From: Phallusia mammillata
Taxonomy: Eukaryota
DNA: 64,000 nt
Assembly: GCA_965637545.1 (NCBI GenBank)
Contig: OZ281497.1
Span: 15,314,001-15,378,000 of the forward strand
Direction of reading: 5' to 3'
Part shown: positions 3,519 through 60,885 of the stretch, in pieces
Layout of the letters: each line of letters starts with the position of its first letter
Position numbering within the stretch: the first letter of the stretch is position 1
Notes under the pieces: model-generated
Databases searched by the model: none
Told to the model about the DNA's origin: nothing
What the model saw: only the letters and a program-made list of their open reading frames with translations
Program-made: the position numbers and the translations under genes

Positions 3519-6500
3519 TTACTGCCGATATTTGTGGAACGGCTTTACGCATAAATATGTGTTTTCACTTGGTAGATCAGTTTTGGACGTTTGTAAGTTT
3601 TCTGTTTTTCTGATCTGAAACTCGACGGTACCTGCAAAAATAAGGTGAAATCGAGATGCCTTTAGCTATTGTTATCCAAACAATTCTAAGATTTACCATA
3701 TGTGATAGCTCCCAAGCATAGAATTGCAATATGAACGTAAATTTTGATTTCCATGCAAATAAGTGTTCGTCTTTAACTATTAAATAGTGTTGCCTAAGTT
3801 GTGTTACTACACAGACTATCACCAAAAATGTTGTAATCTGCTTGTGTTACCGGAAATAAATGTGTGATAAATTCCGTCAACAAGACCCGAAAGGCAAAGC
3901 ATTCCATACATTAGTCCGATACTTAAATTCGCGTAAGGAATCCAAAATAAGCAAAACAAATATATTCCCATGTTGATAACATATGCCGAGTAGATCGAGT
4001 ACACTCTGATTGCAACAAAACAAACAATGTTTTTGAAATGTCATCGAATTTTAGTTATTTTATTGACCTACGAAACTTGTACCTTCCAAGTCTTATCATC
4101 GCACCTTTCCGCAAAGAAATGCGCTGGTCATCGACACCCCTCCGTACATCGCCATGCATAGGCCAACCTCAAGAGATGTGGCAACGATACGATATGTTAT
4201 GTGTATACAAATACGTATTTGTTGAATTTCGACTTAAAAATCAAAATTTACCTCAGCTACTCCAAAAACACAGGACACATAACTTCGTGTTATTTCGCTA
4301 GCGCTAAAGGAGACGTTCAGCCCAAGTTGTAAGTAGGGGAAGATCAATAATAACTGCATCGGTTTGAGGAAAAACATCCAAAGCGTCTTTATGTCTTGAA
4401 AGGATCGTTTTGTTCTCTCAAAGAAACTGATTTGCTCTGTGTTGTCATGCTCCTGCTCACAGTTTTCTTTCTGGCAACGTTGTGAACTGCTTATTATTAC
4501 CACGTAAGTTATGAGTGTATAGAGTATTTTTACAGCATTATGAAGTGTATCTCGAAGGTTACATAATGGGATTAGGTTTATGATTTTTTTTATTGTAACA
4601 GAACATACTTCACGCGTGCCATCATAAAACCCTCTGGAAACCTAAGTTAGATTCGCGAAACGAGTGTTCTTTTCTAAATAATTTCACGTAATATTCGTTG
4701 AAATAGGACTTGCCTTGTTTAGAGCATTGTTTTGCAAAAACATATGAATAATATTACCTTCAGACCTCTTTTTCTACTTCGCGCGCCGCAGGAGAAGTAA
4801 CATCATTGTTTTTTGAAATATAATTTTTCCCATTTTCAGGCTCTTTATCCTTTCCGTTATCTTCAACAAAGTCACATTCACCAGGAAGGCAAGCCTCATT
4901 GTCAAGTGCTTCCGCGTGTTCTGTTGCACAATCATCCTGAACGTCGCCTACATAATCGTAAAGTATGAGAATAATGACAAAGAAATCTAACCGTTGGATT
5001 TGAGTCGGTGATACCTTTTTCAACGTTGGGCAGAAAAATCACGTGTAAACCTAGACCAATCATAGTCAGCACTACAAATATACCCATTACACAATACAAA
5101 GCAGCTTGACCGGCCGGCTGGTACTGCACACCGCTTGTAACGGAGCTGTCTTGGCAGTCGTTTGCACCGCAGTAATCAGCGACCATAAATTGTCTATTGA
5201 ACGAAGTAATAGGTTAATATTTGCTTTAATTTACAATGGCTGAATGCGGTGTTTGTAAACATAACTGCTGGTAAAACAGGTCATGTAGTAAACAAATTTT
5301 ATTTAAAGTAACCTCGATAAAGTTGTCGCTTTCGATGTGAAAATCTATGACCACCCGGTGGCCAGTTACAGCTACTGAAAGCAGTCTTGCGAAAAAACGC
5401 GAATCTATTTTTCCTGTACATGTATCCGATTTGTTAAAACTTTTTTGTTTTTAAAACAGGTGACTTTTATAATTTGTGTTTTTAAATTGTTTGGTAACAA
5501 CACGCGAAAATCGGAATATTGTTTTTGGTCGTTACTGGGGTGTTTAAGTACATGCTATTTTTTCTTGCCATTTATTTGTAAAATGGATCACTTGTAAAAT
5601 AAGTTGATAAAATATAGTTACTATACTTACCCTCCAATAACTGTGACATTACCATCTATAATTGTTGAGTTTAGTGACATTGACTGGGACTCCGATATCT
5701 TAAACATTATGAAGGGAATAATATTCCCAGAGACCTGCAAGACAAACACGAATATACATACTGACATAAAACCGAACATAAAATATATACATACTGGCAT
5801 AAAAGAAGCTTGCTGCTTATTTACCTGCTTCAAAAATAGCCAGAAAAGAAATAACCGCAGTGATATGACCAACATAGTCAATCAAACTTTTCTTTCCATA
5901 CGAAAGGTAGCGGTATGCAAAGTAAATGTTCATCTTGCTCACACATAACCAGAACAAGTTTTTTCCAAGGCCATTAAAAAAGCTCGTCGGTATCAATGTT
6001 CCGTAAACTGTGCAAAAGTTCTATTAACTTATAAGCAAACAACACTATGAACATATGAAGACGATTCGCATACACATGTGTACTGTTTTGTTGTGATGCT
6101 TACTTGCCTGGGTAAAGTTTGCAACAACATAAAGCAAAAACGTCACATCTGCGATAACATTTCCCTGTTTTGCGCGGACATAAGACATTACCACCGGGGC
6201 AATCAACACCCCAAATAATATTGAAGCACCGGTCATGACAGAAAGAGATGTAGTTCCTTACAAAAATAATGATTTAATTTTCAGGAAGTACACTCACACA
6301 GATTAATCGTTTGTCTGTGCAAGTCTAGCAGCCGGAAAACAGTACAGCCTTATTTAGCTTGTCCAATTAGGGATACAGGGCTAAACAAATCAACACTTTT
6401 TTTACATTTTTTTCAAAGTATACTTTTGTTGAGTTGAGTTATAACTTACCTAAACCGCCTTTAATGTTAAGGCTCGATTGAAGATTGCGCAGAGCATTAT

Positions 6501-6635
6501 TTACCGAAAATATCAAAACCATACCGAAGATGTATATAATCATGGTAATTCTGATTTTGTTACGTTTTGACCGATTAGACGGAAGTTCTTGCGTTACCCC
6601 CGACTGTCCGACGTTTCAATTTGGCTAATCGTCAT
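3519..6635 (-). pseudogene. UNC93A: UNC93A-like copy 2, probably disabled
   Basis: Exon-by-exon paralog of copy 1 that continues through SEITRSYVSCVFGV, VGLCMAMYG, GIYLFCLFW and IKIYVHIAILCLGAITYG. Exon 1 is 1 nt shorter than in copy 1 (early TAA), exon 2 is 1 nt shorter, exon 3 is 1 nt longer, exon 4167-4083 has a frameshift, and about 30 codons before LICMEIK appear to be missing. Confidence 0.7.
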
Positions 6636-7640
6636 TCTAAATTTAAGTGTGCCTATTTTTTATTCAAATCACAGAATAAATTAAAACACTTTTTAGCTAC
6701 ACCAAACACAAAATCGTTAGTTTTCGTTCCCCTTCAAACTCCTGATAGCAGTGTTGCACTTTCGCAACCTATCTTTGCAACGACCTTGAACAACCGACTT
6801 TTAAATAGGTTGCTCCATAAACGTCCTGATGATCCCACCATAAATTTACCTTTTTTGTTCGTTTTTAACGAGACTGTTTCATTCAGCGAAAAACAATTTG
6901 GTCTTTGTTGCCAATGAAGTAAAAGGGTCACAACGAACTTACGTAGGCCTACGATCAAAGCCCCATAATGAACTTTGATAGTTCGCAAATAAACATTAAA
7001 CGGAGTGTTAATGGGTTCGTTGTAAAATCTTTAACAGCCGTTTACAAAACGCCAAAAAACTCGTCCTTCTGTACAATACCGCTGCGCATCCAATAAACCG
7101 ATTTACACCCAAGAAATTGTTACGGTTTTAGGCGTATATTAGGTGCAAAAAGACCGGGATTTGTTTCCGACTATCGGGTCCCAAACAGAAGTCACGAACT
7201 ACCTTCATAACGTGACGCATTTCTTGTTCCAACTAAAACAGCGTGCGTGAAGTGTTACACCTTTTTAATTCGTGCACTGCTTGTGGAAAGGATACAATCG
7301 CAACGAACGGCGCTTAGTGCATACTTATGGATATATTTTACTGCACTAAGAAATACATGTAAAGGATACCAGAAGTTGGTGCTGAAAAATAACATGTTGT
7401 ATTGTATTATATATATAACAGTAAAAGTTGTTCACTCTATACAGGTAGTTTTAAGCAGAAGCGCAACAAAACTGATGTTGCTTTGACCATGGTCTATCCA
7501 CCTTATGCAGTTACCGACAGTATAACTTAAATTACATTTACATTTAAACAAACTTGTGGTTGAGGAAGATTTTTTGTGTTGGAGGCAGTTTTCGTTTAAA
7601 GTGCGTTCGGCAATTTGGGAAATTAACAACAACTACACCA

Positions 7641-9718
7641 ATGAGACGGGTCAAATCCAACCAATGCATTTTTCTTATTGCTTTGGTCCATGTCACAATC
7701 TTTGTTCCAACAGGATTGAACTTGGTGGTATTAAACCCTATTGGACCCACTCTTCAGACATTCGTAAACGAGTCGTTTCACTTGAGGCAAGTTTTTCATT
7801 TAAATTATAGTTTCGTTTCTCGTCTTTTTATGATACTGAAGTTTTTTATTTTCAAGGTACAATATAACTCCTCCGACCACAAAACTTAAAGTGATAGTCA
7901 ATTTAGCGCAATCAATGATGATGATTGGAGCTGCTTTTGGTGCTTTTTCAACCCCACTATGGTTGAACTACTTAAGGTAAAGACCTTTGTTTTCAAAAAT
8001 AGGTGAAGTTTTTTTTTTTTTGATAGTGATAGCCTTTTCTGTATCAGTCTCACGTTAAAGTTCCTAATAACCAAATTTATCACTTTTACAGCTTAAAGTT
8101 GTGTTTGGCTGTAATTCATTTGGTCTGTATAGCTTCTATTATTCTCATGTCGCCGGTGACGTACGCGTTTCATGCTTATGAGGCTTTAATCATGGGTCGA
8201 CTAATAGATGGATTCGTCAAGGGAGTGAGTTTTAGTCTCGGCCCGTTATACATTGCTGAAATCACCAGCCGCAAAACAGTAGCAGTCGATCAGGCGCCAC
8301 AAGGTTGGATCCTCATGGTCAGTGCTGGTTTTGCCAACATTATTGCTCATCCGGAGCTTTTAGGCAGTTTGACTACGTGGCCTTATGCAGTGGCGCTGCC
8401 AGTCATTTTCTCGATACTCTATTTGTTTGCTTATCCATGGGTGCCACATACAATACCACACCATGTGCACATCGAAAAACAAAACCAATGGGATGACCTT
8501 GAGGAAGGCTTTGATATGTCAGCATCCTCATTTTTGCTTTTGGAACGCCTTCGACATGCAAAAGGACAAGCCCTGGTGGAAGAATACGAAGAAATTCGAT
8601 CCGAAATCGCTGCAGAACGACATCTAAAAGAGACTCCAATTCGAAAAATTCTCGCCACCCGAAAGTACCAGCGCCAAATGTTGGCAGTGGTTATTTTACA
8701 GTTGACGTTGCAGGCTACAGGATTGCCAGTTCTGGTGCAATTTACCAACACGATTGTTGCGCTATCAGGTCTTTCCCCAGAGTATTCCAACTATTATGCA
8801 CTGGGTAATGTTTAACGTTTTTGATGTGTCTTATAGTTACGTTTCCGCTTAAGTATTCGTTGAGTCTAAGTTAATATACAGTATACCTCGCTTAAACTGA
8901 ATTCGGTTAATCCGGATCTTCGCCAAATTCGAAGTCCGGAAAATTTTTTTTTGGTCCAAAGGGGTCCGGATTAACCAAGGTTTACTGTATTCCTAAAACC
9001 CTACCCCATAGACTTACAAGCTGAAATTTATTTGTGCTTTAGGTATATACGCGGTACTTTCCATCTCTGTTATCATCGGTGCGAGTCTTCTTATCCACTT
9101 TGGATCAAAAAAAGTAATTGTCGGTGGTCTATTTATCGTTGTTGCTGCTCAGATACTTCTGTGCGTATCGCAAGCCTTAACTTACATTATTCCTGGCATG
9201 GGCATTGTTGGTACAGTGAGTCTGGCCTTACTTACGATGGGGGCTGCTAGTGGACCTTTGATGACAGTTTCAGCCTATCCGAGTGAAATAACGACAACAA
9301 TGACTCGACCACATTCGCTGTGGATCGGTGCGACATTCTTTTGGGTGATTTCTTCTGTGATTACATTCATCTTTCCCGTGAGTTCAGCAGCAATTCACGG
9401 ATTTGCATTTATCCCGTTTATCATGCTCGCAATACTGTTGGTAAGTTACTTCTTACATAATGAATTTAGTTACTTTTTTTAGCTTCTTTTCAAAATTTGA
9501 CTAGTTTTGCCGCCCTCCGATTGTAGTACTAGTGCATACACGAGGAGCAAATATATTACTAATTAACACTATCGTTTATGTTTCAGACCTTGTGTGTGCT
9601 GTTTCTTGTTCCATCTGTACATCGGCGACCTGTACATCAGATACAACAGTTCTTTGAAGATTCAAAAAACCAAGACTATTATCCAATACAAAGATTGTTA
9701 ACAAACGATTCTGAATAA
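7641..9718 (+). CDS. SLC2/GLUT-like sugar-porter family transporter 1
   Basis: Exons 7641-7786, 7857-7976, 8092-8804, 9043-9440 and 9587-9718 give an open 12-TM-like protein with GxNxxxxN, an N-glycosylation sequon in loop 1, GRLIDG, PLYIAEI, QLTLQATG and SEITTTMTRP. Confidence 0.88.
8879..8987. mobile_element. Tc1/mariner (pogo/Tigger-like) MITE in intron 3 of SLC2-like 1
   Basis: Imperfect TIRs CAGTATACCTCGCTTAA / TTAACCAAGGTTTACTG flanked by TA on both sides. Confidence 0.7.
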
Positions 9719-10941
9719 TTGGTTTATCATAATGTTACTGAATCGTATCGAAATGGCAAGCCCTTGGTTAATAAAGGTTCTGTTGGTATGCAAAATTTGC
9801 TATGTGTGCCATCAAAATAATAAAGATACATGACCATGCAACATATGACAAAAACAAATGATTAACACTTTTTGTGCCATTTATGCAAACATATTCTGAA
9901 AGTTGTGGCTGACCTGAGTTACAGTTTGTAGAAACGTCGTTATTTTTCGTTTCAACGCATTTTGATTGCATTGTATTTAACACCCAGGATAAAAAATAGT
10001 TTGTTCGAAACTTGTTTTTTTTTCTGTCCAGAATTTTGTTGCTGATACTTTAGCAACAAGCTATGCGAGTGCGGGAAATACCAACGCTTTTCTTAACATG
10101 AACTTCATGTTGCGTTAAAGGGGAAAGCTGAAACATTTGTTTAATCTGAACATTAATGAAATGGAAGGCACGAACGCACAATACGTTCGTCTGCTGCAGA
10201 ATGTTAACAAATTGCAAACGTGAGGAGTATATGACACATAATGTGTCGTGTAATGCATTTTGTGCGGGCGCCATCTCTTGATTTGCATTTTATCTTTATG
10301 CCACCAATAGCTGCAGGCAAAGCTGGCCAGAGAAATTCGATGTTTCTAACAAAACTAGATGCATATCTTAAATATACACACAAGACTTGGCGCATTAGAC
10401 TATACTTGACCGTGTGCCGATATTCGTAACACGCGTATGAAAAAAATCACTGATCCCAATGGATGTACGGAATATGGCCAATTCTAACGGCTTTCATTGT
10501 GCACATAAAAAACAAGGTTGTTTTCGGCCAACAATAAGGTGGCAATTAAAAAAAACTTTGTTCAAACCTAAACTATGCTTTACTACGTGCCAGACCTATT
10601 AAAATTCTCCCGTGTCTTTTATATGTGCATTAATTATCGAACGTGATACGTTGCAAGCTGTCGTATATAATTACATGACAAGCATGTTGTATTTTAATCA
10701 TTGTAGTGTCCTGCGCTTGCGCGTGTGTGTTTCACAGCAGGTACTATAGCACACTTAAGCAAAGGAGAACAAAGAGTTTTCAGTAACTGGAGGTGAGTTC
10801 TACAAAAGAATGTATTTGCGTGTTTTCTTCTGTGATTTTTGTCAATTGTAAGCATATAAAATATGTTTGGGGAAACTGTTGAATTGACGTATAAACAAAA
10901 ACGTACTTTTTACTTTAGCAAATGTCGACGTAGCCTTAACT

Positions 10942-13900: not shown

Positions 13901-14624
13901 TCAGAATTTCGATTATGACATCATAAACGTGGGACTGATCTTCGTATAGTGCAGCTCAAACTGTGCACCTAGCTAGAAATTAATCTGGGTGTTTTGGGCG
14001 CTATTAGATGGTATGTATATGATATAAACCAAGTATTTTGAAACAAAAATAAACAGGTAAATGACGGTCGTTAGTAAAATAAGATGCGCAAAAAGGTTGT
14101 GCATCCCTGCACTAAGCTTTTATTTTCTTTTTTTGACGTACCAACTAGCAATGTGTGGTTTGTTCGTAAGCAGAAAAACAACAAAATATTGGCAGCAAAA
14201 ACATATCTTAACAAATAAAAATTGTCGGAATTAAAGGAATCTTGAAACAAGATGCTTGTATTATTATGTCAGATTTTAACAAAATGACTAACAGTAACTG
14301 TTGCCACTACGTTTGAACAAAAACTGATTATGATTATCCAAACAAAATTTTCTTAAAACCTACGATGTAACTTTGGGGTTCGACCAAAGGCTGAAGAATA
14401 TCGTGGGGGTTCGGCCGCTATAAAAAGGTTAAGAACCACTGGTTTAGCCCTATGCGTGCAACAACTTCATTACTTTGCAGAATTTGTACATCGTATTTTT
14501 TGTTCCTGAGACACACAACCGGTCAGTGGCTGAAATTCAAAACTTTTTTGGTCGAACGAAAACCTGCAAAGACGATGTGGAGAGTAGAAAACTGCTTTCA
14601 AAGGACAGTGACGTCGTTCGCTAG
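10942..14624 (+). CDS. SLC2/GLUT-like transporter 2
   Basis: Exons 10942-11082, 11504-11631, 11872-12581, 12906-13303 and 14481-14624; all GT-AG and in frame; motifs GRWING, PLFVAEI, QLSTQATG, LERFGSKK, PETHNRS. Confidence 0.9.
13447..14441. mobile_element. non-autonomous hAT element in intron 4 of SLC2-like 2
   Basis: TIRs CAGTGGTTCTTAACC / GGTTAAGAACCACTG; TSD GTTTAGCC. Confidence 0.9.
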
Positions 14625-47825: not shown

Positions 47826-48795
47826 GTAGTGTTTTTTTAAGGTGCTTTGGGGGACCGAAACGGTCCCCCAAATTTCTACAGCGGTTTCCCAAAATTTGCC
47901 AGTAGCCTAATAAATAATTCGTTTGAGCAAATACCAGATTGGAAAGAATGGCCTAAAAAATGGATAAATCCTCCGCGCAATATTTTGGATTTTCCCTTGT
48001 AATCCGCGCAAATTTAGGCTTCTTACGTGTAATCCGCGCAAAAAAATGTTGTCCGCGCAACTTAGCACAACTTTCGTAGGTAACTACAATAAACTTTCTT
48101 TAAAATTATATATTTACGTTGCACAATGAAGTTCTATGTCGTCATAAACCTTATTTCAGGAACAATCCACGCAAATCAGTCAAGCACATCGAAACTTTTC
48201 GATCGTCACGCTTGAAATAGCATTTCTATTTCGCTAACGTAGTCGTTAAAAGTACATTTATCTGTATTTTTAGGACGTAGTTTGACTATTAAAGTGACTG
48301 TCGGCTGGTCAAGTTACATAAAATAATGTTTTCTGTATGAAAAATAATTAAAAACAGTTAAGGGCAGTTTGGCAATCAAAAACTATCCCCATAAAAGAAA
48401 TCAGCCAAATGTTTGAATCGTTATGAAAATGAAAAATTGTAGAATCTAGCAGAACAGCTGCGTGAGCAATGGAGCAAAACTGAAGATTCGTCGTGTTTAT
48501 TACTTTATTCAGTTGTTCTTTTTGTCGACTGGTCTGGATAGTCTTGCAGGCGTTACATACAAATTGCGTTAATCGTTAAATCCACCTGTCAATCAAAAGT
48601 CTATCAATCCGCGCAGAAAATTGTAATTCCGCGCAAAAATCCGCGCAATTATTTTGACGAAAAAAATATCCTCCGCGCAAAAATAAAACTTTCCAATCTG
48701 GAGCAAATATGGCTATTTTTTGGTATTTGAATGAAACACTTGCGGTCTCTCAAAAATACTTAGCGGTCACCCAAACCAAACCTTAAAAAAACCTG
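47826..48795. mobile_element. MITE of the 24756 family interrupted by a nested element (47934-48701)
   Basis: Outer ends match the 24756-24897 family. Inner TIR CCAGATTGGAAAG / CTTTCCAATCTGG, TSD AGCAAATA, clustered TCCGCGCAA subterminal motifs. Confidence 0.82.
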
Positions 48796-52302: not shown

Positions 52303-54210
52303 ATGGTGCATGATTCACAACTTTGTTCCATACGATTTTTAACATCTTTTGCATTTTTTCACAATTTTACTACTACTGGTGCAACATGGTTTAAAAGTGT
52401 CTGAGACATGTTATTTTCATTCTCTGCTTAAAGTGTCTGAGACATGTATTTTTCATTCTCTATTTTCAAGCATTGTGTTTTAAACTTTCTTTCCTTGCAT
52501 TGTAATTTTCATGTTTCTTTTAGTTCGTACTTTAGCACACTGTAGCCTATTTTATTGCACCTATAGTTACAAGTTACTGTTCCAAAAGTTCCAAAAAAGT
52601 GAAATCTGCTCTTGTACTGTCTTATTCCGTTACTTTTTTGTCAACGGCCTCTTTTTTGACGATGGTAATGGAGAATTGCAAACTAATCACTTTGCTTAAC
52701 TCATACACGTACATTCATTTACACATTTTTATCCCAAACACATTTATTTGTTTCACTTATAGGTTGGGTAAAATGTGCTCCGTTTATACTCATCATAACG
52801 CACTTGCGTATTAACTACACAATTTCCCGCACTAAACCACTTGGTTTGAATGTTACGTACATATTACTGCATTTATTTACTGATATCATGGAAATTTTGA
52901 ATGTTTTTGCATTGGCGTCCCCGCAACCAGCACTGTTATGTGTTTTGGCATCCCTTTTTAATTTAAAACATACCATATACCAAAGCCTAACGTAATTTAA
53001 AGGTGCAATTTTTTATTTGTCTCTTCAGCATTTGTCGCTTTTCCTTATTAGCCAACATAGTTTTGTGCAATTAAAATTCAGTTGTCTAACTGAACCAATT
53101 TTACTTTTTTCACAAAAGTGTGCAAATTCCGGTTTTGTGTGAATCGAGCCCTAAACATCATTTGCTGCCCGTTTTTTAACGTGTTCCTTAGAAATGGGTA
53201 AATTATACATTAGGATGCCATCGACAAACTCTTGGGTTGTTGCTTTATAGTGTTACAACAAAGATGTTCGGTGTAATGTTACAACATCGCCACATAAAGT
53301 TAATACAACCGAATCAAGTGTTTTTAAGTAGAAAAGCCTAAACGGCTTATGCAGTGCCTGTTGGTTGCCGAGTCCAGCTGTACATTGGGACTTCTAAGAA
53401 TAGTTGTTGTTACACCCAGGGCGTTGAGGAAACCAACGTTGTCCACAGAACATAATAATTGTTTTTGTTAGATTGTTTAACTACAGTTGAAAAGTTTCCT
53501 GCGGTATATCACTTTTAGGCTTCAGTGATATACTTAGGATTAGTCGATCGCCTGTCCGGCACGCGGTAACTTTTTGTCCGATCTGGTTTGACCGTGGGCG
53601 ATGATATGCGGGATAACTTTGGGATGGTAAACAAAAGATTTCATCAGTAATGAATGTGGTAATCCGATTTTTTATTGATGGCTTTGCACATCGCGCTTGC
53701 AATTAGGTCCAAAAGAAAACCCGTACGTTTTTCAAACACCGATCTGTAATTAATCTCGTTTGACAGAAGTAGGCTAGTTGGCATGACGTATTCAATTCGA
53801 TTGTTCCTGTTTTGTTAAGGTAGTTAAAGGCAAATTATTCAGCATTCTTGTTGTCTCATTAGTCGCGTTGTGATTCCAATTAAACAGAAGCACTGTTTTG
53901 CAAAAGTCAGCGGTACTGTACCGTACTTCTGCAGGTCGCAACAAGCTTGTGTGACTCAGCAAATACAAATGGTGCTGAGGCTGGGCTAAAGTTTCAGGAG
54001 ACCAGACGCTCTGTTTAAGTCTGCACCTTTTTCGGGCGGCTTCAATTGAAAAGAAAACTTTAGTGGTGCAAAAGCGTGAAGCTGCCGGTAACAGACCTGT
54101 GACCAGTAACTGGGGCGCCGCCAAACCTTTGTGACTACTGTAGCAGCAGTAAGAACCTAGTAACACAATTTGATTTGCAGCAGGTTGTTTCAAGAAGATT
54201 GCCAAAGATA

Positions 54211-55451
54211 ATGGGAATTACATTTTATTCAAATGTTGTGAGCCCACCTTGCAGGGCAGTGTGGCTAACTTTAAAAACCCTTGGTTTGGAGTTCAAACTG
54301 CATGAGGTAAACTTTGCTGAAATGGAGCATAAAAGTCCGGAGTTTCTTGCCGTTAATCCGAGGGGCAAGATACCTGGGTTGAATGACAATGGATTTGTAC
54401 TGGGAGAAAGGTAGGTTATATAGCAGTGGTTCTCAAACTTTTTTGAGCGCGAGCCAAATCTGAGTTTTATAAACACCTCACGACCCAAGCCTCAAACAAC
54501 AAAAAATGTATTTTATTTCCTTGTACGAATACTTACTCATACTCTAACGCTAACTGTCACATGGCCAAGTTCAGTTAACGCAAGATTAACTTATCCTATT
54601 ATTTCCCGTGCTATGACGTTACAATCGCCATGTGCGAAACAGTATAGTGGGAAGGCTATATTGTGTGCGCCACCCATTTTTTTACCCGGTGCGACACATG
54701 TTTGGGTCGCGACCCATACTTTGAGAACCACTGTTATATAAATTAACTAAGATTTATTTATTATTTTTGTGTATACGGTAAAGTGTAAACGAAGATACTT
54801 TAACCTGTTTCTGTATTTATAGCCGTGCCATAATGCAATATTTGTGCAACAAATTCGAGAAAAAGAATGAAAACGAACTTTACCCGAAAGATCCCCAAGC
54901 CCGAGCGCTAGTTGATCAAATGCTTTACATAGATGTCGACGCAGTGGAAGAATTCTATTCTTACGTGGTATGTTGTCGACAATAAAGCATTCTAAAATGG
55001 GTTAACAATAATCTATAGTTTACAATTTTGTGCGCAGAAACCGTTTCAGGTGTTGTTTCTCGAACAAAAACCTGGCTTGGGTGAAGAATCAAAAATTCAA
55101 GACTACTTTAAGAAGCTCGAATGCTCTCTTTCAAAAAACAAGTTTTTAGCTGCCGACCACTTCACAATTGCTGGTAAGTAATTCGCTTTATAGTGTACCT
55201 GTGTTTGTTCTAGAAGCAGAATTGTCATCCATGTTTTTTTGGAAACTATTAGTTTTGCCTTTGTTGCCGCAGATTTCTCGGTGATAGCAAGCATCACCAT
55301 CTTGGATTTGTGTAAATACGACAACTTTGGCGAGTTCCCCAAATTAAAGAAGTGGATGGAGGCAATGAGGGCACTGCCAGGATTTGAGGAGTGTGTTGGA
55401 ACACATGTAAAAAGCGTGACTGCAATGTATCAAGGAAAGATCAACGCATAA
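54211..55451 (+). CDS. cytosolic glutathione S-transferase, Ser-type (theta/delta-like)
   Basis: Exons 54211-54410, 54823-54967, 55038-55173 and 55273-55451 give SPPCRAV, NPRGKIP, LGESRAIMQYL, LYPKDP..RA.VDQML, FLAADHFTIAD and FPKLKKW. Confidence 0.92.
54424..54733. mobile_element. hAT MITE in GST intron 1
   Basis: TIRs CAGTGGTTCTCAAA / TTTGAGAACCACTG; TSD TTATATA(G/A). Confidence 0.88.
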
Positions 55452-56255
55452 ACATTTGTGATTGGCTACCCAATAATCGCTTGTGTATCAAACTCTGTAA
55501 CACTTAATAAACGAAGTAGCCTAGCTGCCTATAGTGCTTGCCCTTGTTATACAATATACTGCAAATGTTTAAAATACTATGTCGGCCTTTGATGAAATAG
55601 GGCCGTTAACCGCATAAACAAAGGTTGTGCACCCTGTTCATAGATGATGTACCTAACCATGAGTGAAATAAACAAAGCTAAGTAACCTTGCGTTGTCCGG
55701 TTGATATTTTTGTGTAGGCACACAAGCCTTGGTAACGCGTTAGGCATGGTGTCCGTTGCATACATTTCGCAGTTCTCAATCTATTGAGAAAGAAACAAGT
55801 GACATGTGTGATGCAACCGTGCGTAGCGTGGAACGTAAAACATCAAATACAGGCCTAGGCTACCATACGCGGTTTGACTCAATTTGCTTCCTTGGACAAC
55901 AAGCCTTTAATTGAACCGATCCCGATAGCTTATAGCCTATGTTTGTTGGACGAATAATTTAACTGCTCAAACTTGAAATCATTTACAATAAATTGACTTG
56001 GCACAAGTTTATTGTCATCAGTGGTATTGTTAATTGTTATACCGGTGGCGATAGGGTATTTTGAGTCTGACCATAGAATTCTAAAAACATAGAAGGACCA
56101 CTGGGCTTCGTCACGCTTGAGTAAGACTGACGCGATCAGAAAAAGTGTCAACAGCGGCAGGCGACAAATAGGCTACTGTACCTGCTTTTTGCAGTGATGT
56201 CGGTTTATTTTATAACATTTTTTACCTTGTTAGCAGGAGCTTTACCTTAAAAAGT

Positions 56256-56969
56256 ATGTCGGGCAGTGAAATTACCGAAAAGTTGCTTTTGGAACTGTTT
56301 GACATTCCAGATCGACTCGACACAACTCCTGTCAGTGTCATGCAGTCCACATGCGAAAATACCCCTGATTTTGTAAAGCGTATTTTACCTGACAAAGTCA
56401 AAGTATCTCCTGCAGGGTATGAAGTTTTTACAAAATGGCTAGGTATGCATGCCAAATGCAACCAAGCAAGCATAATTATTGAAGAGTATCCAAAGTATTG
56501 TTGTGAGGCTCATATTTTATTTTTAAAATTGTCACAAATGGAAGCAGCAAAACAACTGTTACACTTAGTTAACGAAATTGTGCGTCATAAAGCAGAAAAG
56601 AAATTTCCACACCTACGATATATTATTCAACATTTGTACGATGCCAATGATGCAAATTCATCATTTCTTTGCATGCTTGAAAGAAAAATCGGATGTTTAA
56701 AAAGGCCATCAGAACATTTTACATTCTTCACAGACTATTTGTATTTAAATTTTAGCAAGGAATGCAACAAGAAACTTAGCACTATTAATTTTGATTCTGT
56801 GATTGTTTATGTATTTTCTGGTTCCCACTTTTTAAGGTTTACAGAAACTTTAAGTGACATGGCCAAATGTGACTATGAGCAAAGTGAAACAATTGTTACC
56901 TATATTGTCAAGCTTTTTATAAGGGTACTTGGTCACAGTTTTAGCAAAACAGTTCGAAAACATTTTTAG
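56256..56969 (+). CDS. second ORF of the P element, 237 aa, unknown; weakly resembles the P/THAP9 transposase C-terminal domain
   Basis: Long uninterrupted ORF in AT-rich DNA, wholly inside the TIRs, convergent with the transposase; contains SSFLCMLERKIGCLKRPS and IVKLFIRVLGHSFSK. Confidence 0.7.
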   Translation: MSGSEITEKLLLELFDIPDRLDTTPVSVMQSTCENTPDFVKRILPDKVKVSPAGYEVFTKWLGMHAKCNQASIIIEEYPKYCCEAHILFLKLSQMEAAKQLLHLVNEIVRHKAEKKFPHLRYIIQHLYDANDANSSFLCMLERKIGCLKRPSEHFTFFTDYLYLNFSKECNKKLSTINFDSVIVYVFSGSHFLRFTETLSDMAKCDYEQSETIVTYIVKLFIRVLGHSFSKTVRKHF

Positions 56970-57049
56970 AAAAGTAAACAAACAATCTTCTGGGTTGCGA
57001 GCAAGTTTTGCCACTACATCAAAATAACAAGGGTTGCAATAGCTGTAAA

Positions 57050-60000
57050 TTATTTATTTTTCTTTTGGAGTGGTTCATCACACAATTCTGTCCAGGCATT
57101 CTTTTTTCCAAATGTAGTGTTTCCCCCTTTAATTTTTTTTATTATTTTGCGTTGGGTTATGTGCTGCACCCCATATGACACCTGAAATATATCAGGGTTT
57201 CTGGCTCGATGTCCAAGTTGTCTCTAAATAAAATTACAAATTGTGTAACCGGTCTTCTGTTATTTATGCAAACAGCAACAAATAAGTTTACAATGTTTCC
57301 AAAAAATGCCTCCAACACATCTTGTGAAAAAGTGTGAAGGCACACATATTTGAATTTTTCTAAAAGCCTCTTTGCAAGAAAAATCAGATTTCTTGTTGTA
57401 AATACTAATCCTTCCAGTGTTGGACGGGCCATAATTCTTTTCGTCTCACCCTTGTGGTGTTTTTCTATATCATTCTACATAAATAAAACATTGAGGTGAT
57501 GAACTGAGGACACCAATGGGAATAACATCACAGGGACTAAGAGTTAACATAATCTTCATGCAGAAAGTTAGGTAACTATTATATTGTTTTGTTAATGTTG
57601 TCAGAGTACTACATAAATGAAAAGACCTTCCAAGCAATAAGCTCTTCAATAAACACATTTTGTAGCCATAACAATCGAGAGTCTTCTGGATTGCGAATTG
57701 GACACTTGACGCCACAATTTACTATGTCGAACCACCTACAAGTGCAAACAAGCCTATTGTAAATAACCTCCATATAACAAATGGATCCAAATGTTATATT
57801 GGTTTAACAAGTTGGTACAGTAATGTACTTACTTAGCAAAAAGAAGGATGCAATCAGCAGTTCCAGATGTGTTGGAGTTAGCAAGCAAACACTGCCCTAC
57901 TCTCCAACTTAATATATCTCGAGCCAAGTTTACCTTCATCTGTATGATAAACTGCTTACTTATGTGGTTATGCAGTCATAGCATATTAATTACCTTTGTA
58001 CATGAATTCAATTGAATATGAGCCAAGCTTAAGTTAGTTTTTCTGAGCACAGGCATATCCTTGTCGGTATTATACAATTCTACAACATGGGTTCATAAAA
58101 TATCTTTTCCATTCCTGTTCATGTACTTTGATCCACCAGGTTTTGAAGAAAATAAACTGTTTCTTGCAGTCTGTAAAAAAAGGCAGGCATGAAAAAATAT
58201 CCAGTTGGAGTATACTTGTTGCTTACTTTTAACAAATGTGAAGGATCCGAACATAAATAAACAGGACGACTTGGACAAATCGGATTAGGTCCATGCAGTG
58301 GTTCCAACAAACTTATTTCTTTTTTTCCACTAATCAATTTAAAAAACTGTCGATTTGTAGCCATTCCATCAGCAATAACTGCATGGATCTGCAAACCTCT
58401 AGACTCGCATTCCAACAAAATTTTCCAAAATATTAAGGCCAGAGCTGGTGCAGGGGTAACTTTGGTTGGATACCACGCTATAGGCAGTGAAACTTTTCGT
58501 TTGACTGTTCTCACAAAAAACACTAAAACAGGATGAGTTTTAAAATCATGTTTAAGAACCTAAAATTTTCATTTCAAAGTAAACACTTGCCCAAAACATG
58601 TGTTGCAATATCATTGCTTAAGTCAGCTCCAGAGTAGTCCAGGTCAACAAACCCAACCAGTTTGTTGTCCTTCATGACAAGGTTTTCTTTTACTGCAAAA
58701 TCATAGATCAGTAAAAATGTTTATTTGGCATACACCAAAATAAAACATACTTTTCATTTCATCCAGTGTGAGAAATCCAACTAACTCAGAGACCGAGGTT
58801 GATACCCTTTCTATCTCATCAAGAGACATTTGATTAATTCCAGGCTGAGGCTTTATAAAATTACTACACAAAAGTATAATAAATATTTTGCTGTCCCTTA
58901 ACAAACTGCAACTTTACCGGTAACGCTTGATGGTTGTTGGGGAAGGCAAAGTCAAAACATCGGAGGCACGTATATGTTCATATGCTGCTGGCGACCGGCA
59001 ATAAAATTCAATGCACCATCGTACTAAATCTGGATGGTAACGGCGAGCATTAGGTGGCAGTGTTATGTTCAATAACTGTTGCTTTAAAAACATTTCTTTC
59101 CAAGGATTGGTGTTCTGCAAAATGCAATTAATTGTTATTATTACTGTTTAATAGGTAACTAGCTTCATATAGTGTACTTGTTTAACTTGTGAGTCATCAT
59201 CTTCTAGCAAAAGTGATTCACTTTGAATTTCAACGCACTCAGGACATGTTGCATTTTTCTTGCAAGCTAGAATTATAACATATCTTGATACAATCTGAAA
59301 ATACATACGAAACAATATACACTTACCAATTAATCTACAGTTTGTTGCCCTAAATACATTTTTAATTTTGATTGATCCATTTTCCCATGTAAGAATAGGA
59401 TGAACTTTTGTGTTCTTAACTTCTTCTTGTACTCCACTACAGGGAGTCAGATTGGAAATTTCATCTACATATTGTTTGTAGAAAAGCAGTTGGTCATAAT
59501 ATACAAAAATAAGTTAGCTACAGATTGCAAACACTTTTTCAAGTAGTAGTGTCTCATCAGTGCAACTGGTGACAACACAGATTTATGTTGTTCAGATTTA
59601 AATGACCAAAGCAAAAATTGGAAACTTACCTAATACTTTACTTAGTGCAACTTGTTGGGCATCAGGAAGAGGTACTGATCCCAAATCAACTTTCCACCCA
59701 TCTACAGACAACTCTGCAATTTTTGCATTTAATGCAAAAACAACCCTAACAGTGTGAAAATTAATTCTGATTAGTACTTTTTTGGGGTAAAAACTTGCCT
59801 AAACTTTTACCTTAAATGAGGAACTAGTTGTGCCTCTACATGTAATTCTGACACCAAGTTGTTTCCTTTCTCATAAAATATCCATTTTTCTGAAAATGAA
59901 TCTGCATTATTAACTACTTTTACTGACATGGCACCTGGCAGACTAACAGCTGGCCTCTCTAACCTTTTAAAAACTCAGGTAGTTGTTTAAAAGACTTCTG

Positions 60001-60475
60001 TAAGTCAACAATATTCTTGTGTCTTTTTCTGGGCTCTTCTGCAACTCTTGCCACTGGTGGCTTTCTAGGTGGATGGGTAAAACTTGACTTTTTTGGTAAA
60101 TGTAAACATGGTTTAGCACCCTGGCAAAGAGTCTTGAATTTGCCATGAACAACAATATCTGTTGGCATAAAGTGCAACTCACAAATTGCTGCCCTGTGAT
60201 GAAAAATACTGACATTGACTGATATTACGATTTTTTTGCATATTCATGGCAATTTACGTTTCTTTTTGTAGCATTTCTTTAATGCAATCACCAGAGGCTG
60301 CATCTCTCATGGACAGCACAAACCTTGTAAGCTGCTCTCTGTGGGCTTTTTCTGCTGAGCTTTTGGCAAGAGCCGGTTTTCGGACAGCAAAAATTGAAAC
60401 TTTGCGTTCGTTCTTAATTTTAGAATTTCTGACGCCTGAAATACAGCCAGGCACACAGCAATGACTAGGCGCCAT
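57050..60475 (-). pseudogene. THAP-domain P-element transposase, 15 exons, one in-frame stop
   Basis: Hand splicing gives THAP (CCVPGC...ICELHF...AKPCL), RSPAAYEHIR...LPSPTTIKR, the catalytic motifs LTLDEMK, IADGMATN, SDPSHLLK and SQDVLEAFFGNIRQLG...NP, and KMKVNLA. Single TGA at 58093-58095 where Trp is expected. Confidence 0.9.
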
Positions 60476-60626
60476 GATTTATATTTACACTTTTCGAGCG
60501 ACCAAACAGACAACAGGTACTAAAGTAACGAGAAAACTCGCGGTATCGTGTCAGTCTTACTCATGCGGAACGAGACGCAAGAACAATGAGTGGTCCTTCT
60601 ATGTTTTTAGAATTCTATGGTCTGAC

Positions 60627-60656
60627 CATAGATTACTTACCAGTAAGTTATCTATG
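60627..60656. mobile_element. 30-bp P-type remnant (excision footprint or micro-MITE)
   Basis: CATAGATTACTTACCAGTAAGTTATCTATG, a near-perfect hairpin with CATAG...CTATG ends, flanked by GTCTGAC at 60620-60626 and 60657-60663. Confidence 0.85.
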
Positions 60657-60885
60657 GTCTGACAAGCGCAGTAGTTCCAAAAACTAGTACCAAAAAAAAA
60701 ATCCGGATCGATTTGGCATAGGAAGGAGTTTCAATCTTTTTCCAGTTGGACAAAAAATATGCTTTGCTGTGCAGCAAATCATGCGTGTTAAACCAATCAA
60801 GTGAATCGTTTTAATATACCGCATACATTTTGCACTGTGATGATTTTATCATAAAGTAACGGCAAGTCAAGGTAAATCAATCCTA

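What the first reader, a model, noticed from the sequence alone, without database searches (positions are those of the whole stretch)
56256..57320. Candidate two-component (split) P transposase: truncated catalytic gene plus a convergent ORF resembling the missing C-terminal domain
The transposase ends naturally about 60 residues after the catalytic Glu (...WTELCDEPLQKKNK*), whereas Drosophila P transposase (766 aa, E531) has over 200 residues there. Only about 80 bp beyond the stop, a convergent 237-aa ORF ends. Its second half recalls the THAP9/P C-terminal pattern as I remember it: LY...S.L....GL..PS followed about 65 residues later by a helix like IVKLFIRVLGHSFSK. If real, this P lineage supplies that domain in trans from a second gene, or uses it as a regulator. 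Tail-to-tail overlap of transcripts could also produce silencing dsRNA.
Basis: partly seen in the sequence, partly recalled or inferred. Interest (0 to 1): 0.82.

Follow-up and report, generated by a model that had tools for sequence, protein, structure and literature searches.

The report
P transposon with split transposase gene
This jumping gene, a relative of the fruit-fly P element, encodes the cutting enzyme and the enzyme's usual tail domain as two separate genes that face each other; the same layout recurs in distant relatives in sea squirts, although the copy in this window is damaged.

Summary
A 4,548-bp P-type transposon lies at 56072-60619, with perfect 31-nt inverted ends and a 7-bp target duplication. 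It carries two convergent genes.

- **Transposase (minus strand):** 15 exons, 779 codons. It stops 63 residues after the Glu of SQDVLE and has no C-terminal domain (CTD).
- **ORF2 (plus strand, 56256-56969):** it has 19 relatives, the full-length ones 277-331 aa. Their profile's best match in the PDB is the CTD chain of Drosophila P transposase (E 2.6e-4). An AlphaFold model matches that chain (Z 10.2, 114 of 118 residues). Ten of 19 members hit Pfam Tnp_P_element_C.

Five further elements share the layout, one of them in Ciona intestinalis with perfect TIRs. Their transposases are 44-61% identical to each other and to this one, and their ORF2 proteins 24-35%. Transposase frames are open, and three elements checked share the same short tail and stop.

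So the split is an old, maintained feature of this lineage. That ORF2 acts in trans as the missing domain is inferred, not shown.

This copy is defective: a nonsense codon in the transposase, a deletion of about 32 aa in ORF2, and a 2-nt frameshift in ORF2.

The scan had already noted this stretch as a P element (s1-364076), but not the split.

The parts
56065..56071 (.). Left target-site duplication GTCTGAC
   Evidence: Identical 7-mer at 60620-60626.
56072..56102 (+). Left 31-nt terminal inverted repeat (CATAGAATTC...GGACCACT)
   Evidence: perfect match to 60589-60619 on the opposite strand; 0 matches in 100 shuffles.
56108..56136 (+). Left subterminal inverted repeat with the motif CGTCACGCTTGA
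   Evidence: The same motif sits at the left end of L003 and L005, and its reverse complement at the right end of L003. The window's right-end copy is a variant of it. Its role as transposase-binding site and/or promoter element is inferred.
56256..56969 (+). ORF2: a defective copy (237 aa) of a family whose full-length members are 277-331 aa and correspond to the P/THAP9 transposase C-terminal region
56586..56588 (+). Deletion junction inside ORF2 (CAT microhomology). About 32 codons are missing, including the FENDxLEYxxGY motif
   Evidence: other copies read ...ILAYVGGYTV|56586 and 56588|PEKEAMAQSF..., both in the ORF2 frame; the window sequence has a gap at alignment columns 166-197.
56945..56946 (+). 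Site of a 2-nt deletion that shifts the ORF2 C-terminus. With the AA seen in other copies the frame runs on to a stop at 57025-57027
   Evidence: AA put in behind 56945 in X10, X13, X17 and X3; the restored tail ...SKKQFENIFRKVNKQSSGLRASFATTSK* matches the family's ...FAKKLF...GLRGDLKK.
57050..57052 (-). Transposase stop codon (TAA)
   Evidence: Stops at the equivalent place in L003 and L004.
57053..60475 (-). P-type transposase gene, 15 exons, 779 codons. Exons: 60475-60258, 60193-59964, 59901-59811, 59745-59630, 59464-59327, 59266-59178, 59114-58918, 58863-58751, 58692-58591, 58522-58227, 58170-57994, 57939-57833, 57735-57627, 57474-57292, 57223-57053
   Evidence: Nine of the 14 introns are seen as joints in RNA-like contigs and a tenth only in a contig of the DNA-labelled run X3. 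The other four are predicted from GT..AG ends and frame. My spliced aligner reproduces the model. Pfam: RNaseH_N 31.9 bits, HTH 20 bits, RNaseH_C 15.7 bits.
58093..58095 (-). Nonsense codon 556 (TGA) in this copy. Other copies read TGG (Trp)
   Evidence: 58093 T>C in all four runs.
57053..57223 (-). Last exon: end of the RNase H domain plus the conserved short tail ...KKIKGGNTTFGKKNAWTELCDEPLQKKNK
   Evidence: 55-75% identity to five relatives, the best-conserved part of the protein in L003, L005 and L008.
60545..60573 (-). Right subterminal inverted repeat
60589..60619 (-). Right 31-nt terminal inverted repeat
60620..60626 (.). Right target-site duplication GTCTGAC

Best explanation
The stretch is the 3' third of a P-superfamily DNA transposon (56072-60619) from a lineage in which the transposase is encoded in two pieces.

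The long, intron-rich gene on the minus strand has a THAP-like N-terminus, an HTH domain and an RNase H catalytic core, with stretches between the two RNase H halves that resemble the GTP-binding insertion by eye only. It ends in a short conserved tail 63 residues after the catalytic Glu. An intronless gene on the plus strand, starting about 150 nt inside the other end of the element and running towards the transposase gene, encodes the whole C-terminal region (THAP9_C / Tnp_P_element_C), which in ordinary P transposases is fused to the enzyme.

Most likely (inferred) the two proteins assemble into the active transposase. The free CTD would take the place it has in the Drosophila complex, between the RNase H domain of one subunit and the GTP-binding domain of the other, contacting transposon and target DNA. 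The split probably arose by inversion of the 3' part of an ancestral one-piece gene at the flexible linker.

The window's copy is a decaying member: stop codon 556 in the transposase, an in-frame deletion of about 32 codons that removes the LEYxxGY motif of ORF2, and a 2-nt deletion that changes the ORF2 C-terminus.
For: **Shown**

1. Anatomy, TIRs and target duplication.
2. Spliced gene model. Joints with minus-strand GT..AG ends appear in RNA-like contigs from two studies, and the last exon is continuous from 57223 to at least 56586. The model has 779 codons and one internal stop.
3. ORF2 has 19 relatives at E <= 1e-3 among 1.84 billion representatives. All are short stand-alone proteins; none is a one-piece transposase.
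4. Homology to the CTD:
   - Pfam PF12596 hits in 10 of 19 members. Three stored proteins (P0006, P0009, P0010) score above the curated cut-off, as does the intact L003 ORF from the same locus as P0006.
   - The family profile's best hit among 177,635 PDB sequences is 6p5a_B, the CTD chain of Drosophila P transposase (E 2.6e-4).
   - An AlphaFold model of P0001 (pLDDT 83.9) has 6p5a_B as its top Foldseek hit (prob 0.99). With VIA-align it is the only hit at Z >= 8: Z 10.2, rmsd 2.6 A, 114 of 118 residues, next best 7.2.
   - The five nearest ESM Atlas shapes are all THAP9/P-transposase clusters and cover residues 6-284.
5. The same convergent layout occurs in L003 (Ciona intestinalis, perfect 30-nt TIRs), L004, L005 (38-nt TIRs), L007 and L008.
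6. Spliced models of their transposases have no stop or frameshift: full length in L003, L005 and L008, and the catalytic two thirds in L004 and L007. In L003 and L004 the tail reads straight into a stop at the same place as in the window; the other models end with the same tail motif.
7. Identity between elements is 44-61% for the transposase and 24-35% for ORF2, so the layout is old.

**From the literature:** in Drosophila the CTD is joined to the RNase H domain by a flexible, disordered linker and packs against the other subunit (PMC7776569). That makes supply in trans structurally plausible.
Against: - No experiment or complex model shows that ORF2 binds the transposase or is needed for transposition.
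- All copies seen in this species carry lesions: the window copy as listed, and other copies with W660*, 20 nt of deletions in the ORF2 5' half, and a 72-nt exon-11 deletion variant.
- The strand of ORF2 transcripts in this species is not established, because the contigs are unstranded and ORF2 has no intron.
- Pairwise divergence of the two genes across the six elements is uncorrelated (r = -0.18), because the elements are about equally distant. Co-evolution could therefore not be demonstrated.
- Two homologues (L001, L002) sit on short contigs that show no transposase tail in the 77-82 nt downstream, and L006 has ORF2 without a neighbouring transposase.
Confidence: 0.7

Rival explanations
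1. ORF2 is a regulator rather than a subunit of the catalytic complex. It could be an inhibitor, a titrating or assembly factor, or mainly a source of antisense RNA against the transposase mRNA.
For: A spliced minus-strand transcript contig runs antisense across at least 384 nt of ORF2. NCBI's three isoforms of the C. intestinalis ORF2 gene splice from a donor at L003 10751 into acceptors that lie antisense within the transposase gene, replacing the last 50 or so residues. ORF2 evolves faster than the transposase.
Against: The transposase has no CTD of its own for a free CTD to compete with. In Drosophila the CTD contacts transposon and target DNA in the strand-transfer complex (PMC7776569). 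The whole fold is conserved, including the basic C-terminal helix.
Confidence: 0.2
2. The layout is a dead-end rearrangement: an inversion in a non-autonomous lineage that is moved by ordinary one-piece P transposases, with ORF2 open only because the copies are young.
For: The copies in this species are few, 1-3% diverged and all damaged. Substitutions between copies in the transposase exons look neutral, 11 non-synonymous to 5 synonymous.
Against: Six elements with 44-61% (transposase) and 24-35% (ORF2) identity keep the same layout and open transposase frames. ORF2 is also open in L003, L004 and L005. Three elements checked share the same transposase tail and stop. That cannot result from youth. 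No one-piece transposase appeared among the ORF2 hits.
Confidence: 0.05
3. The transposase gains its own C-terminal domain by splicing to further exons, and ORF2 is irrelevant.
For: The gene has many short introns, and alternative joining (exon 11 skipped) is seen.
Against: RNA-like contigs from two studies carry the last exon unspliced from 57223 through the stop to at least 56586, or 56711 in X13. Every hit of the ORF2-family queries lies on the ORF2 strand; none lies on the transposase strand of any locus. The stop position recurs in L003 and L004.
Confidence: 0.03
4. ORF2 is an unrelated host gene or a chance open frame next to the transposon.
For: The window's ORF2 alone has no Pfam, PDB or word-search hit.
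Against: It lies inside the TIRs. It has 19 homologues, and their profile and fold match the P transposase CTD.
Confidence: 0.02

Closest known systems
Drosophila melanogaster P element and its 751-aa transposase (PDB 6P5A/6PE2)
   Same: 31-nt TIRs, a short target duplication, and internal repeats just inside the ends. The transposase has a THAP-like N-terminus, an HTH domain, an RNase H core with DEM / ADG / SQDxLE motifs, and an all-helical CTD with the same fold (Z 10.2). Alternative splicing may give truncated products.
   Different: In Drosophila the CTD is fused to the enzyme through a flexible linker. Here it is a separate, intronless, convergent gene with an extra N-terminal helical domain, and the enzyme ends in a short conserved tail. 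The target duplication is 7 bp rather than 8 bp. There are 15-16 exons rather than 4.
THAP9 and THAP9-like one-piece transposases (Pfam PF21787, PF21788, PF21789, PF22824, PF12596)
   Same: The ORF2-family model aligns over 174-184 residues with THAP9_C-containing clusters of the ESM Atlas. Members hit PF12596 at the LEYxAGY motif.
   Different: THAP9 is a single polypeptide, and in vertebrates a domesticated gene without TIRs. Here the region is a stand-alone protein inside a mobile element.
Ciona P elements (Pcin1-3; Kimbacher et al. 2009, cited in PMC7776569 and PMC10824691)
   Same: From my memory of the abstract, P elements in Ciona have TIRs, target duplications and a transposase of 13 small exons. 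The L003 element is from C. intestinalis, and C. savignyi proteins H2YMF8 and H2ZF06 belong to the ORF2 family.
   Different: The paper is not held in the library, so I could not check whether a second gene or a missing CTD was described. Nothing in the papers I could read mentions one.
Two-protein DNA transposons such as PIF/Harbinger (transposase plus Myb-like protein)
   Same: Two genes within one pair of TIRs, with a second protein expected to be needed alongside the catalytic one.
   Different: In PIF/Harbinger the second protein is an unrelated DNA-binding factor. Here it is a piece of the transposase itself. The two systems are not homologous.

Membership tests
P superfamily DNA transposon | RNase H-type catalytic core of the TNP/THAP9 kind (PF21787 and PF21789, with DDE residues) | tested here: met
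   PF21787 scores 31.9 bits against a cut-off of 24.6, and 25.2 bits on exon 10 alone. PF21789 is partial, 15.7 bits, because the domain is split by an intron. The motifs LDEMK (393), ADGMATN (482) and SQDVLE (711) are present. Their assignment as the catalytic triad rests on my knowledge of the family.
P superfamily DNA transposon | N-terminal THAP zinc finger | tested here: inconclusive
   There is no Pfam THAP hit on exon 1 or exon 2 taken alone, and the domain is split by intron 1. By eye, C-x2-C (CCVPGC) and C-x2-H (CELH) are present in the spliced protein.
P superfamily DNA transposon | P-type HTH domain (PF12017) | tested here: inconclusive
   20 bits, E 9e-4, below the cut-off of 23.
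P superfamily DNA transposon | Short TIRs of about 31 bp and a target duplication of 7-8 bp | tested here: met
   Perfect 31-nt TIRs and a 7-bp GTCTGAC duplication.
P superfamily DNA transposon | Single transposase polypeptide that includes the C-terminal domain | tested here: not met
   The transposase stops 63 residues after the Glu. The CTD is encoded by ORF2 on the other strand. This is the variant feature.
P/THAP9 transposase C-terminal domain (PF12596 Tnp_P_element_C, PF22824 THAP9_C): ORF2 family | Sequence match to the family profile | tested here: met
   10 of 19 members hit PF12596 at E <= 0.01. Four sequences score above the cut-off of 22.6: P0006 24.8, P0009 26.5, P0010 23.3 and the L003 ORF 24.7 bits, the first and last being products of one locus. 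The family profile against the PDB gives 6p5a_B at E 2.6e-4. The window's ORF2 itself gives no hit, because the matching segment is deleted.
P/THAP9 transposase C-terminal domain: ORF2 family | Same all-helical fold as the solved CTD | tested here: met
   The model of P0001 against 6p5a_B gives Z 10.2, rmsd 2.6 A and 114 of 118 residues aligned, the only hit at Z >= 8 among 48,161 chains. It is also Foldseek rank 1 of 350,542 chains, with prob 0.99 and E 0.087. Caveat: helical folds often give middling Z by chance. Here the sequence evidence agrees.
P/THAP9 transposase C-terminal domain: ORF2 family | Works as part of the transposase complex (DNA contacts in the strand-transfer complex) | not testable with these tools
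   This needs a complex model or a transposition assay.

The most novel reading that the evidence does not exclude
A natural heteromeric P transposase. In an old ascidian P lineage the enzyme was cut at its flexible linker, and the CTD became a separate subunit expressed from the opposite end of the element. Both ends share the TIR and a subterminal motif. The convergent, overlapping transcripts would give the element a built-in antisense control of transposase dosage.
Probability: 0.5. Interest if true: 0.72.

Novelty: new variant of a known kind. Interest (0 to 1): 0.62.

Why it matters
The role of the C-terminal domain of P transposase and THAP9 is poorly understood. For human THAP9 it is described as uncharacterised (PMC10824691).

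A lineage in which evolution has already separated that domain from the catalytic core offers a ready-made system. One can ask whether the domain is needed, with what it assembles, and what it contacts, simply by leaving one gene out.

It also adds P elements to the short list of DNA transposons that need two element-encoded proteins. It shows that the annotated "uncharacterized protein" LOC113475742 of Ciona intestinalis is a transposon gene. And it warns annotators that a P transposase without a CTD is not necessarily truncated.

Tried and rejected
- **Window ORF2 searched alone.** Pfam, PDB sequences, two word-index protein searches and ESM Atlas features gave nothing useful. The full HMMER search was needed.
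- **Exact look-up of ORF2 in assemblies.** Not on record.
- **Other copies in the window.** None; only the TIR pair matches itself.
- **Co-divergence of the two genes across six elements.** No correlation, because the elements are about equally distant.
- **Selection between copies within this species.** In the ORF2 3' half I counted 1 non-synonymous and 4 synonymous changes; in the 5' half 3 and 0; in the transposase 11 and 5. The numbers are too small to use, and the transposase ratio looks neutral.
- **Literature.**
  - 'Pcin1' found nothing relevant, and the Kimbacher 2009 paper is not held.
  - No paper found mentions a second P-element gene.
  - The run and assembly accessions of the relatives appear in no paper, so the hosts of L001, L002 and L004-L008 are unknown.
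- **Motif at 48204.** A further CGTCACGCTTGA there has no TIR beside it and was taken as chance.
- **Nested tail-to-tail insertion of two P elements.** Rejected: one TIR pair encloses both genes in three elements, and there is no N-terminal transposase coding on the ORF2 strand.
Full report
**1. What is there**

The finding lies in the left third of a 4,548-bp DNA transposon.
- Perfect 31-nt terminal inverted repeats sit at 56072-56102 and 60589-60619 (none expected by chance).
- They are flanked by a 7-bp duplication, GTCTGAC.
- Inside each TIR lies a second inverted repeat, 56108-56136 and 60545-60573.
- Upstream on the + strand, about 54175-55451, are exons of a glutathione S-transferase-like host gene (by eye).
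- The window has no other copy of the element.

**2. The transposase gene (minus strand)**

Six-frame translation shows P-type pieces in several frames. Pfam finds:
- the P HTH domain (20 bits);
- TNP-like RNaseH_N (31.9 bits, above the cut-off);
- the start of RNaseH_C at SQDVLEAFFG.

I laid the contigs of three RNA-like runs from two studies, plus one DNA run, on the element.
- Nine joints have minus-strand GT..AG or GC..AG ends and skip 54-166 nt. A tenth was seen only in the DNA-labelled run.
- Four more introns are predicted from splice signals and frame.
- Together this gives 15 exons and 779 codons, from the ATG at 60475 to the TAA at 57050-57052. A spliced aligner I wrote reproduces the model.
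- The protein carries the motifs LDEMK, ADGMATN and SQDVLE. By my knowledge of the family these hold the catalytic D, D and E.
- It ends 63 residues after that Glu.
- The last exon is continuous in the contigs from 57223 down to at least 56586, well past the stop. No further coding exon is spliced on.

This copy has one nonsense codon: codon 556 is TGA at 58093-58095, where all four runs read TGG.

**3. ORF2 (plus strand, 56256-56969)**

On its own ORF2 matches nothing. A full HMMER search of 1.84 billion representative proteins found 19 relatives at E <= 1e-3, the best at 6.4e-22.
- All are short proteins. The complete ones are 277-331 aa. None is a one-piece transposase.
- The alignment shows conserved features along the whole length:
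  - an acidic N-terminal ELLFxDxD;
  - L(T/S)xxGxxxxxxW;
  - QYP...FF;
  - ILDII;
  - FENDxLEYxxGY;
  - LIxxMEKxxGxLxYPS;
  - YIVKLFxRxLSxxFAKKLF;
  - a basic end, GLRGDLKK.

The window's ORF2 is damaged in two places.
- **Internal deletion.** It lacks about 32 residues (alignment columns 166-197), including LEYxxGY. This agrees with the reads. At 56586-56588 other copies continue with sequence that reads ...ILAYVGGYTV on one side and PEKEAMAQSF... on the other, both in the ORF2 frame.
- **Frameshift.** Other copies have two extra A after 56945. With them the frame runs to 57025-57027 and ends ...SKKQFENIFRKVNKQSSGLRASFATTSK, like the rest of the family. The two stop codons are then 22 nt apart rather than 80.

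**4. Is ORF2 the missing domain?**

Four independent tests say yes.
- **(a) Pfam.** Tnp_P_element_C (PF12596) is hit by 10 of 19 members. P0006, P0009 and P0010 score above the curated cut-off, as does the intact L003 ORF from the same locus as P0006. One member also gives a weak THAP9_C hit.
- **(b) PDB by sequence profile.** The best of 177,635 sequences is 6p5a_B, the separately modelled CTD chain of Drosophila P transposase (E 2.6e-4; profile 120-236 against chain 2-122).
- **(c) PDB by fold.** An AlphaFold model of P0001 built with the family alignment (pLDDT 83.9) has 6p5a_B as its first Foldseek hit (prob 0.99, TM 0.56 by target). In an exhaustive alignment against 48,161 chains it is the only match at Z >= 8: Z 10.2, rmsd 2.6 A, 114 of 118 residues, Drosophila residues 617-734, next best Z 7.2.
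- **(d) ESM Atlas.** The five nearest shapes are all THAP9/P-transposase clusters. They align over 146-184 residues spanning 1-284 of the model, so the N-terminal helical domain also belongs to the ancestral C-terminal region.

**5. Is the arrangement a property of the lineage?**

Yes. I looked up the contigs that encode the relatives.

| Locus | Source | ORF2-like gene | Transposase on the opposite strand | TIRs |
|---|---|---|---|---|
| L003 | Ciona intestinalis chromosome AP043569.1 | 10001-10906, 301 aa, intact | 14347 down to 10939 | perfect 30 nt, 9843-9872 and 14474-14503 |
| L004 | ENA ERZ25072152 | 5224-6084 | 8511 down to 6133 | contig ends before the right end |
| L005 | ENA ERZ25072152 | 1362-2195 | 7119 down to 2954 | 38 nt, 1248-1285 and 7275-7312 |
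| L007 | ENA ERZ25067590 | 8031-8663 | 16006 down to 10013 | not identified |
| L008 | Logan SRR25569784 | about 147-1132, frameshifted | 4608 down to 1223 | not identified |

- Spliced models of these transposases have no stop or frameshift. L003, L005 and L008 are open over the full length, with 15-16 exons. L004 and L007 are open over the catalytic two thirds.
- In L003 and L004 the transposase ends in the same tail, followed by a stop at the same place as in the window: GGNTTFGNKNAWTSVSDEPLPKKTRKSD* and GSTTFGKENAWTEVSDIPLPKRPRK*. The models for L005, L007 and L008 end with the same tail motif.
- Identity between elements is 44-61% for the transposase and 24-35% for ORF2. Keeping the frames open, the same order and the same stop over that distance needs selection.
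- Ciona savignyi proteins H2YMF8 and H2ZF06 also belong to the ORF2 family.
- Exceptions are L006, with a broken ORF2 and no neighbouring transposase, and L001 and L002, short contigs with too little flank to judge.

**6. How it most likely works**

*Shown:* the catalytic gene lacks the CTD, and the CTD is a separate convergent gene inside the same TIRs.

*From the literature* (PMC7776569), for Drosophila:
- the CTD is tied to the RNase H domain only by a flexible, disordered linker;
- it contacts transposon and target DNA.

*Inferred:*
- The free ORF2 protein docks in the same place and completes the enzyme.
- The split arose by inversion of the 3' part of a one-piece gene at the linker.
- The conserved transposase tail and the ORF2 N-terminal part may be the new interface.

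Both genes start 77-156 nt inside a TIR (154 and 114 nt in the window). A subterminal motif, CGTCACGC(A/T)TGA, lies just inside the left TIR of the window element, L003 and L005. Its reverse complement lies inside the right TIR of L003, a one-mismatch variant at the window's right end, and a looser 75%-complementary repeat at L005's right end. It may be the transposase binding site, a shared promoter element, or both (inferred).

**7. Transcripts**

- Spliced, and therefore minus-strand, contigs run antisense over the 3' half of ORF2.
- One RNA-like contig covers the ORF2 5' half (56275-56494) at lower depth.
- In C. intestinalis, NCBI annotates the ORF2 gene (LOC113475742) on its own strand. 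Three isoforms splice from a donor after codon 250 into acceptors that lie antisense within the transposase gene.

Sense-antisense overlap is therefore likely. Neither dsRNA nor any effect of it is shown.

**8. State of the family in this species**

- Loose ends with other flanking sequence at both TIRs show at least one more insertion site.
- Every copy seen is damaged. The window copy has the lesions listed above. Other copies have W660* (57630), 20 nt of deletions at 56362-56403, and a 72-nt deletion in exon 11.
- The RNA-like contigs of one study join exon 10 directly to exon 12. That shifts the frame and would give a truncated protein.

**9. Verdict**

The trans-acting role is the best explanation but remains an inference.

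I found no description of a split P transposase in the papers I could search. The key Ciona paper and Repbase could not be read, so prior notice cannot be excluded.

The scan had already noted the same stretch as a P element (s1-364076), without the split.

Noticed in passing
window 57736-57993 (exon 11 = 57833-57939): RNA-like contigs of runs X10 and X13 join exon 10 directly to exon 12, skipping the 107-nt exon 11. This shifts the frame and would give a protein cut off inside the insertion domain. It recalls the truncated repressor forms of the Drosophila P element. A DNA contig also shows a variant with a 72-nt deletion inside exon 11 (57866-57937).
   Followed up: partly
L003 10001-12952 (Ciona intestinalis AP043569.1): NCBI's 'uncharacterized protein LOC113475742' (XP_078482418.1 and isoforms) is the ORF2 gene of a P element with perfect TIRs. 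Its annotated isoforms splice antisense into the transposase gene. That gene appears intact (15 exons, no stop) but is not among the genes called in this locus.
   Followed up: partly
window 56109-56120 and 60561-60572; L003 9903 and 14452; L005 1293: A subterminal motif CGTCACGC(A/T)TGA lies just inside the TIR in three elements whose transposases are only about 50% identical: at both ends of L003, at the left end of L005, and at the left end of the window element, whose right end has a one-mismatch variant. It is a candidate THAP binding site and/or promoter element.
   Followed up: partly
window 60620-60663: Directly after the right target duplication lies a palindrome, GTCTGAC CATAGATTACTTAC..GTAAGTTATCTATG GTCTGAC.
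   Followed up: no
window 54175-55451 (+): Exons of a glutathione S-transferase-like host gene end about 600 nt before the transposon. The insertion is intergenic, or in the 3' flank of that gene.
   Followed up: no
window 57630 and 58093: The window copy and the other copies each carry one TGG-to-TGA change, at different Trp codons: codon 556 in the window and codon 660 in the others. These look like independent inactivating hits in a family that is still transcribed.
   Followed up: partly
L007 4672 and 5996-6892: In L007 the subterminal motif lies about 3.3 kb upstream of the ORF2-like gene, with an unexplained 298-aa open frame between them. The spacing between the two genes is also 1.35 kb rather than tens of nt. 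This element probably carries insertions.
   Followed up: no
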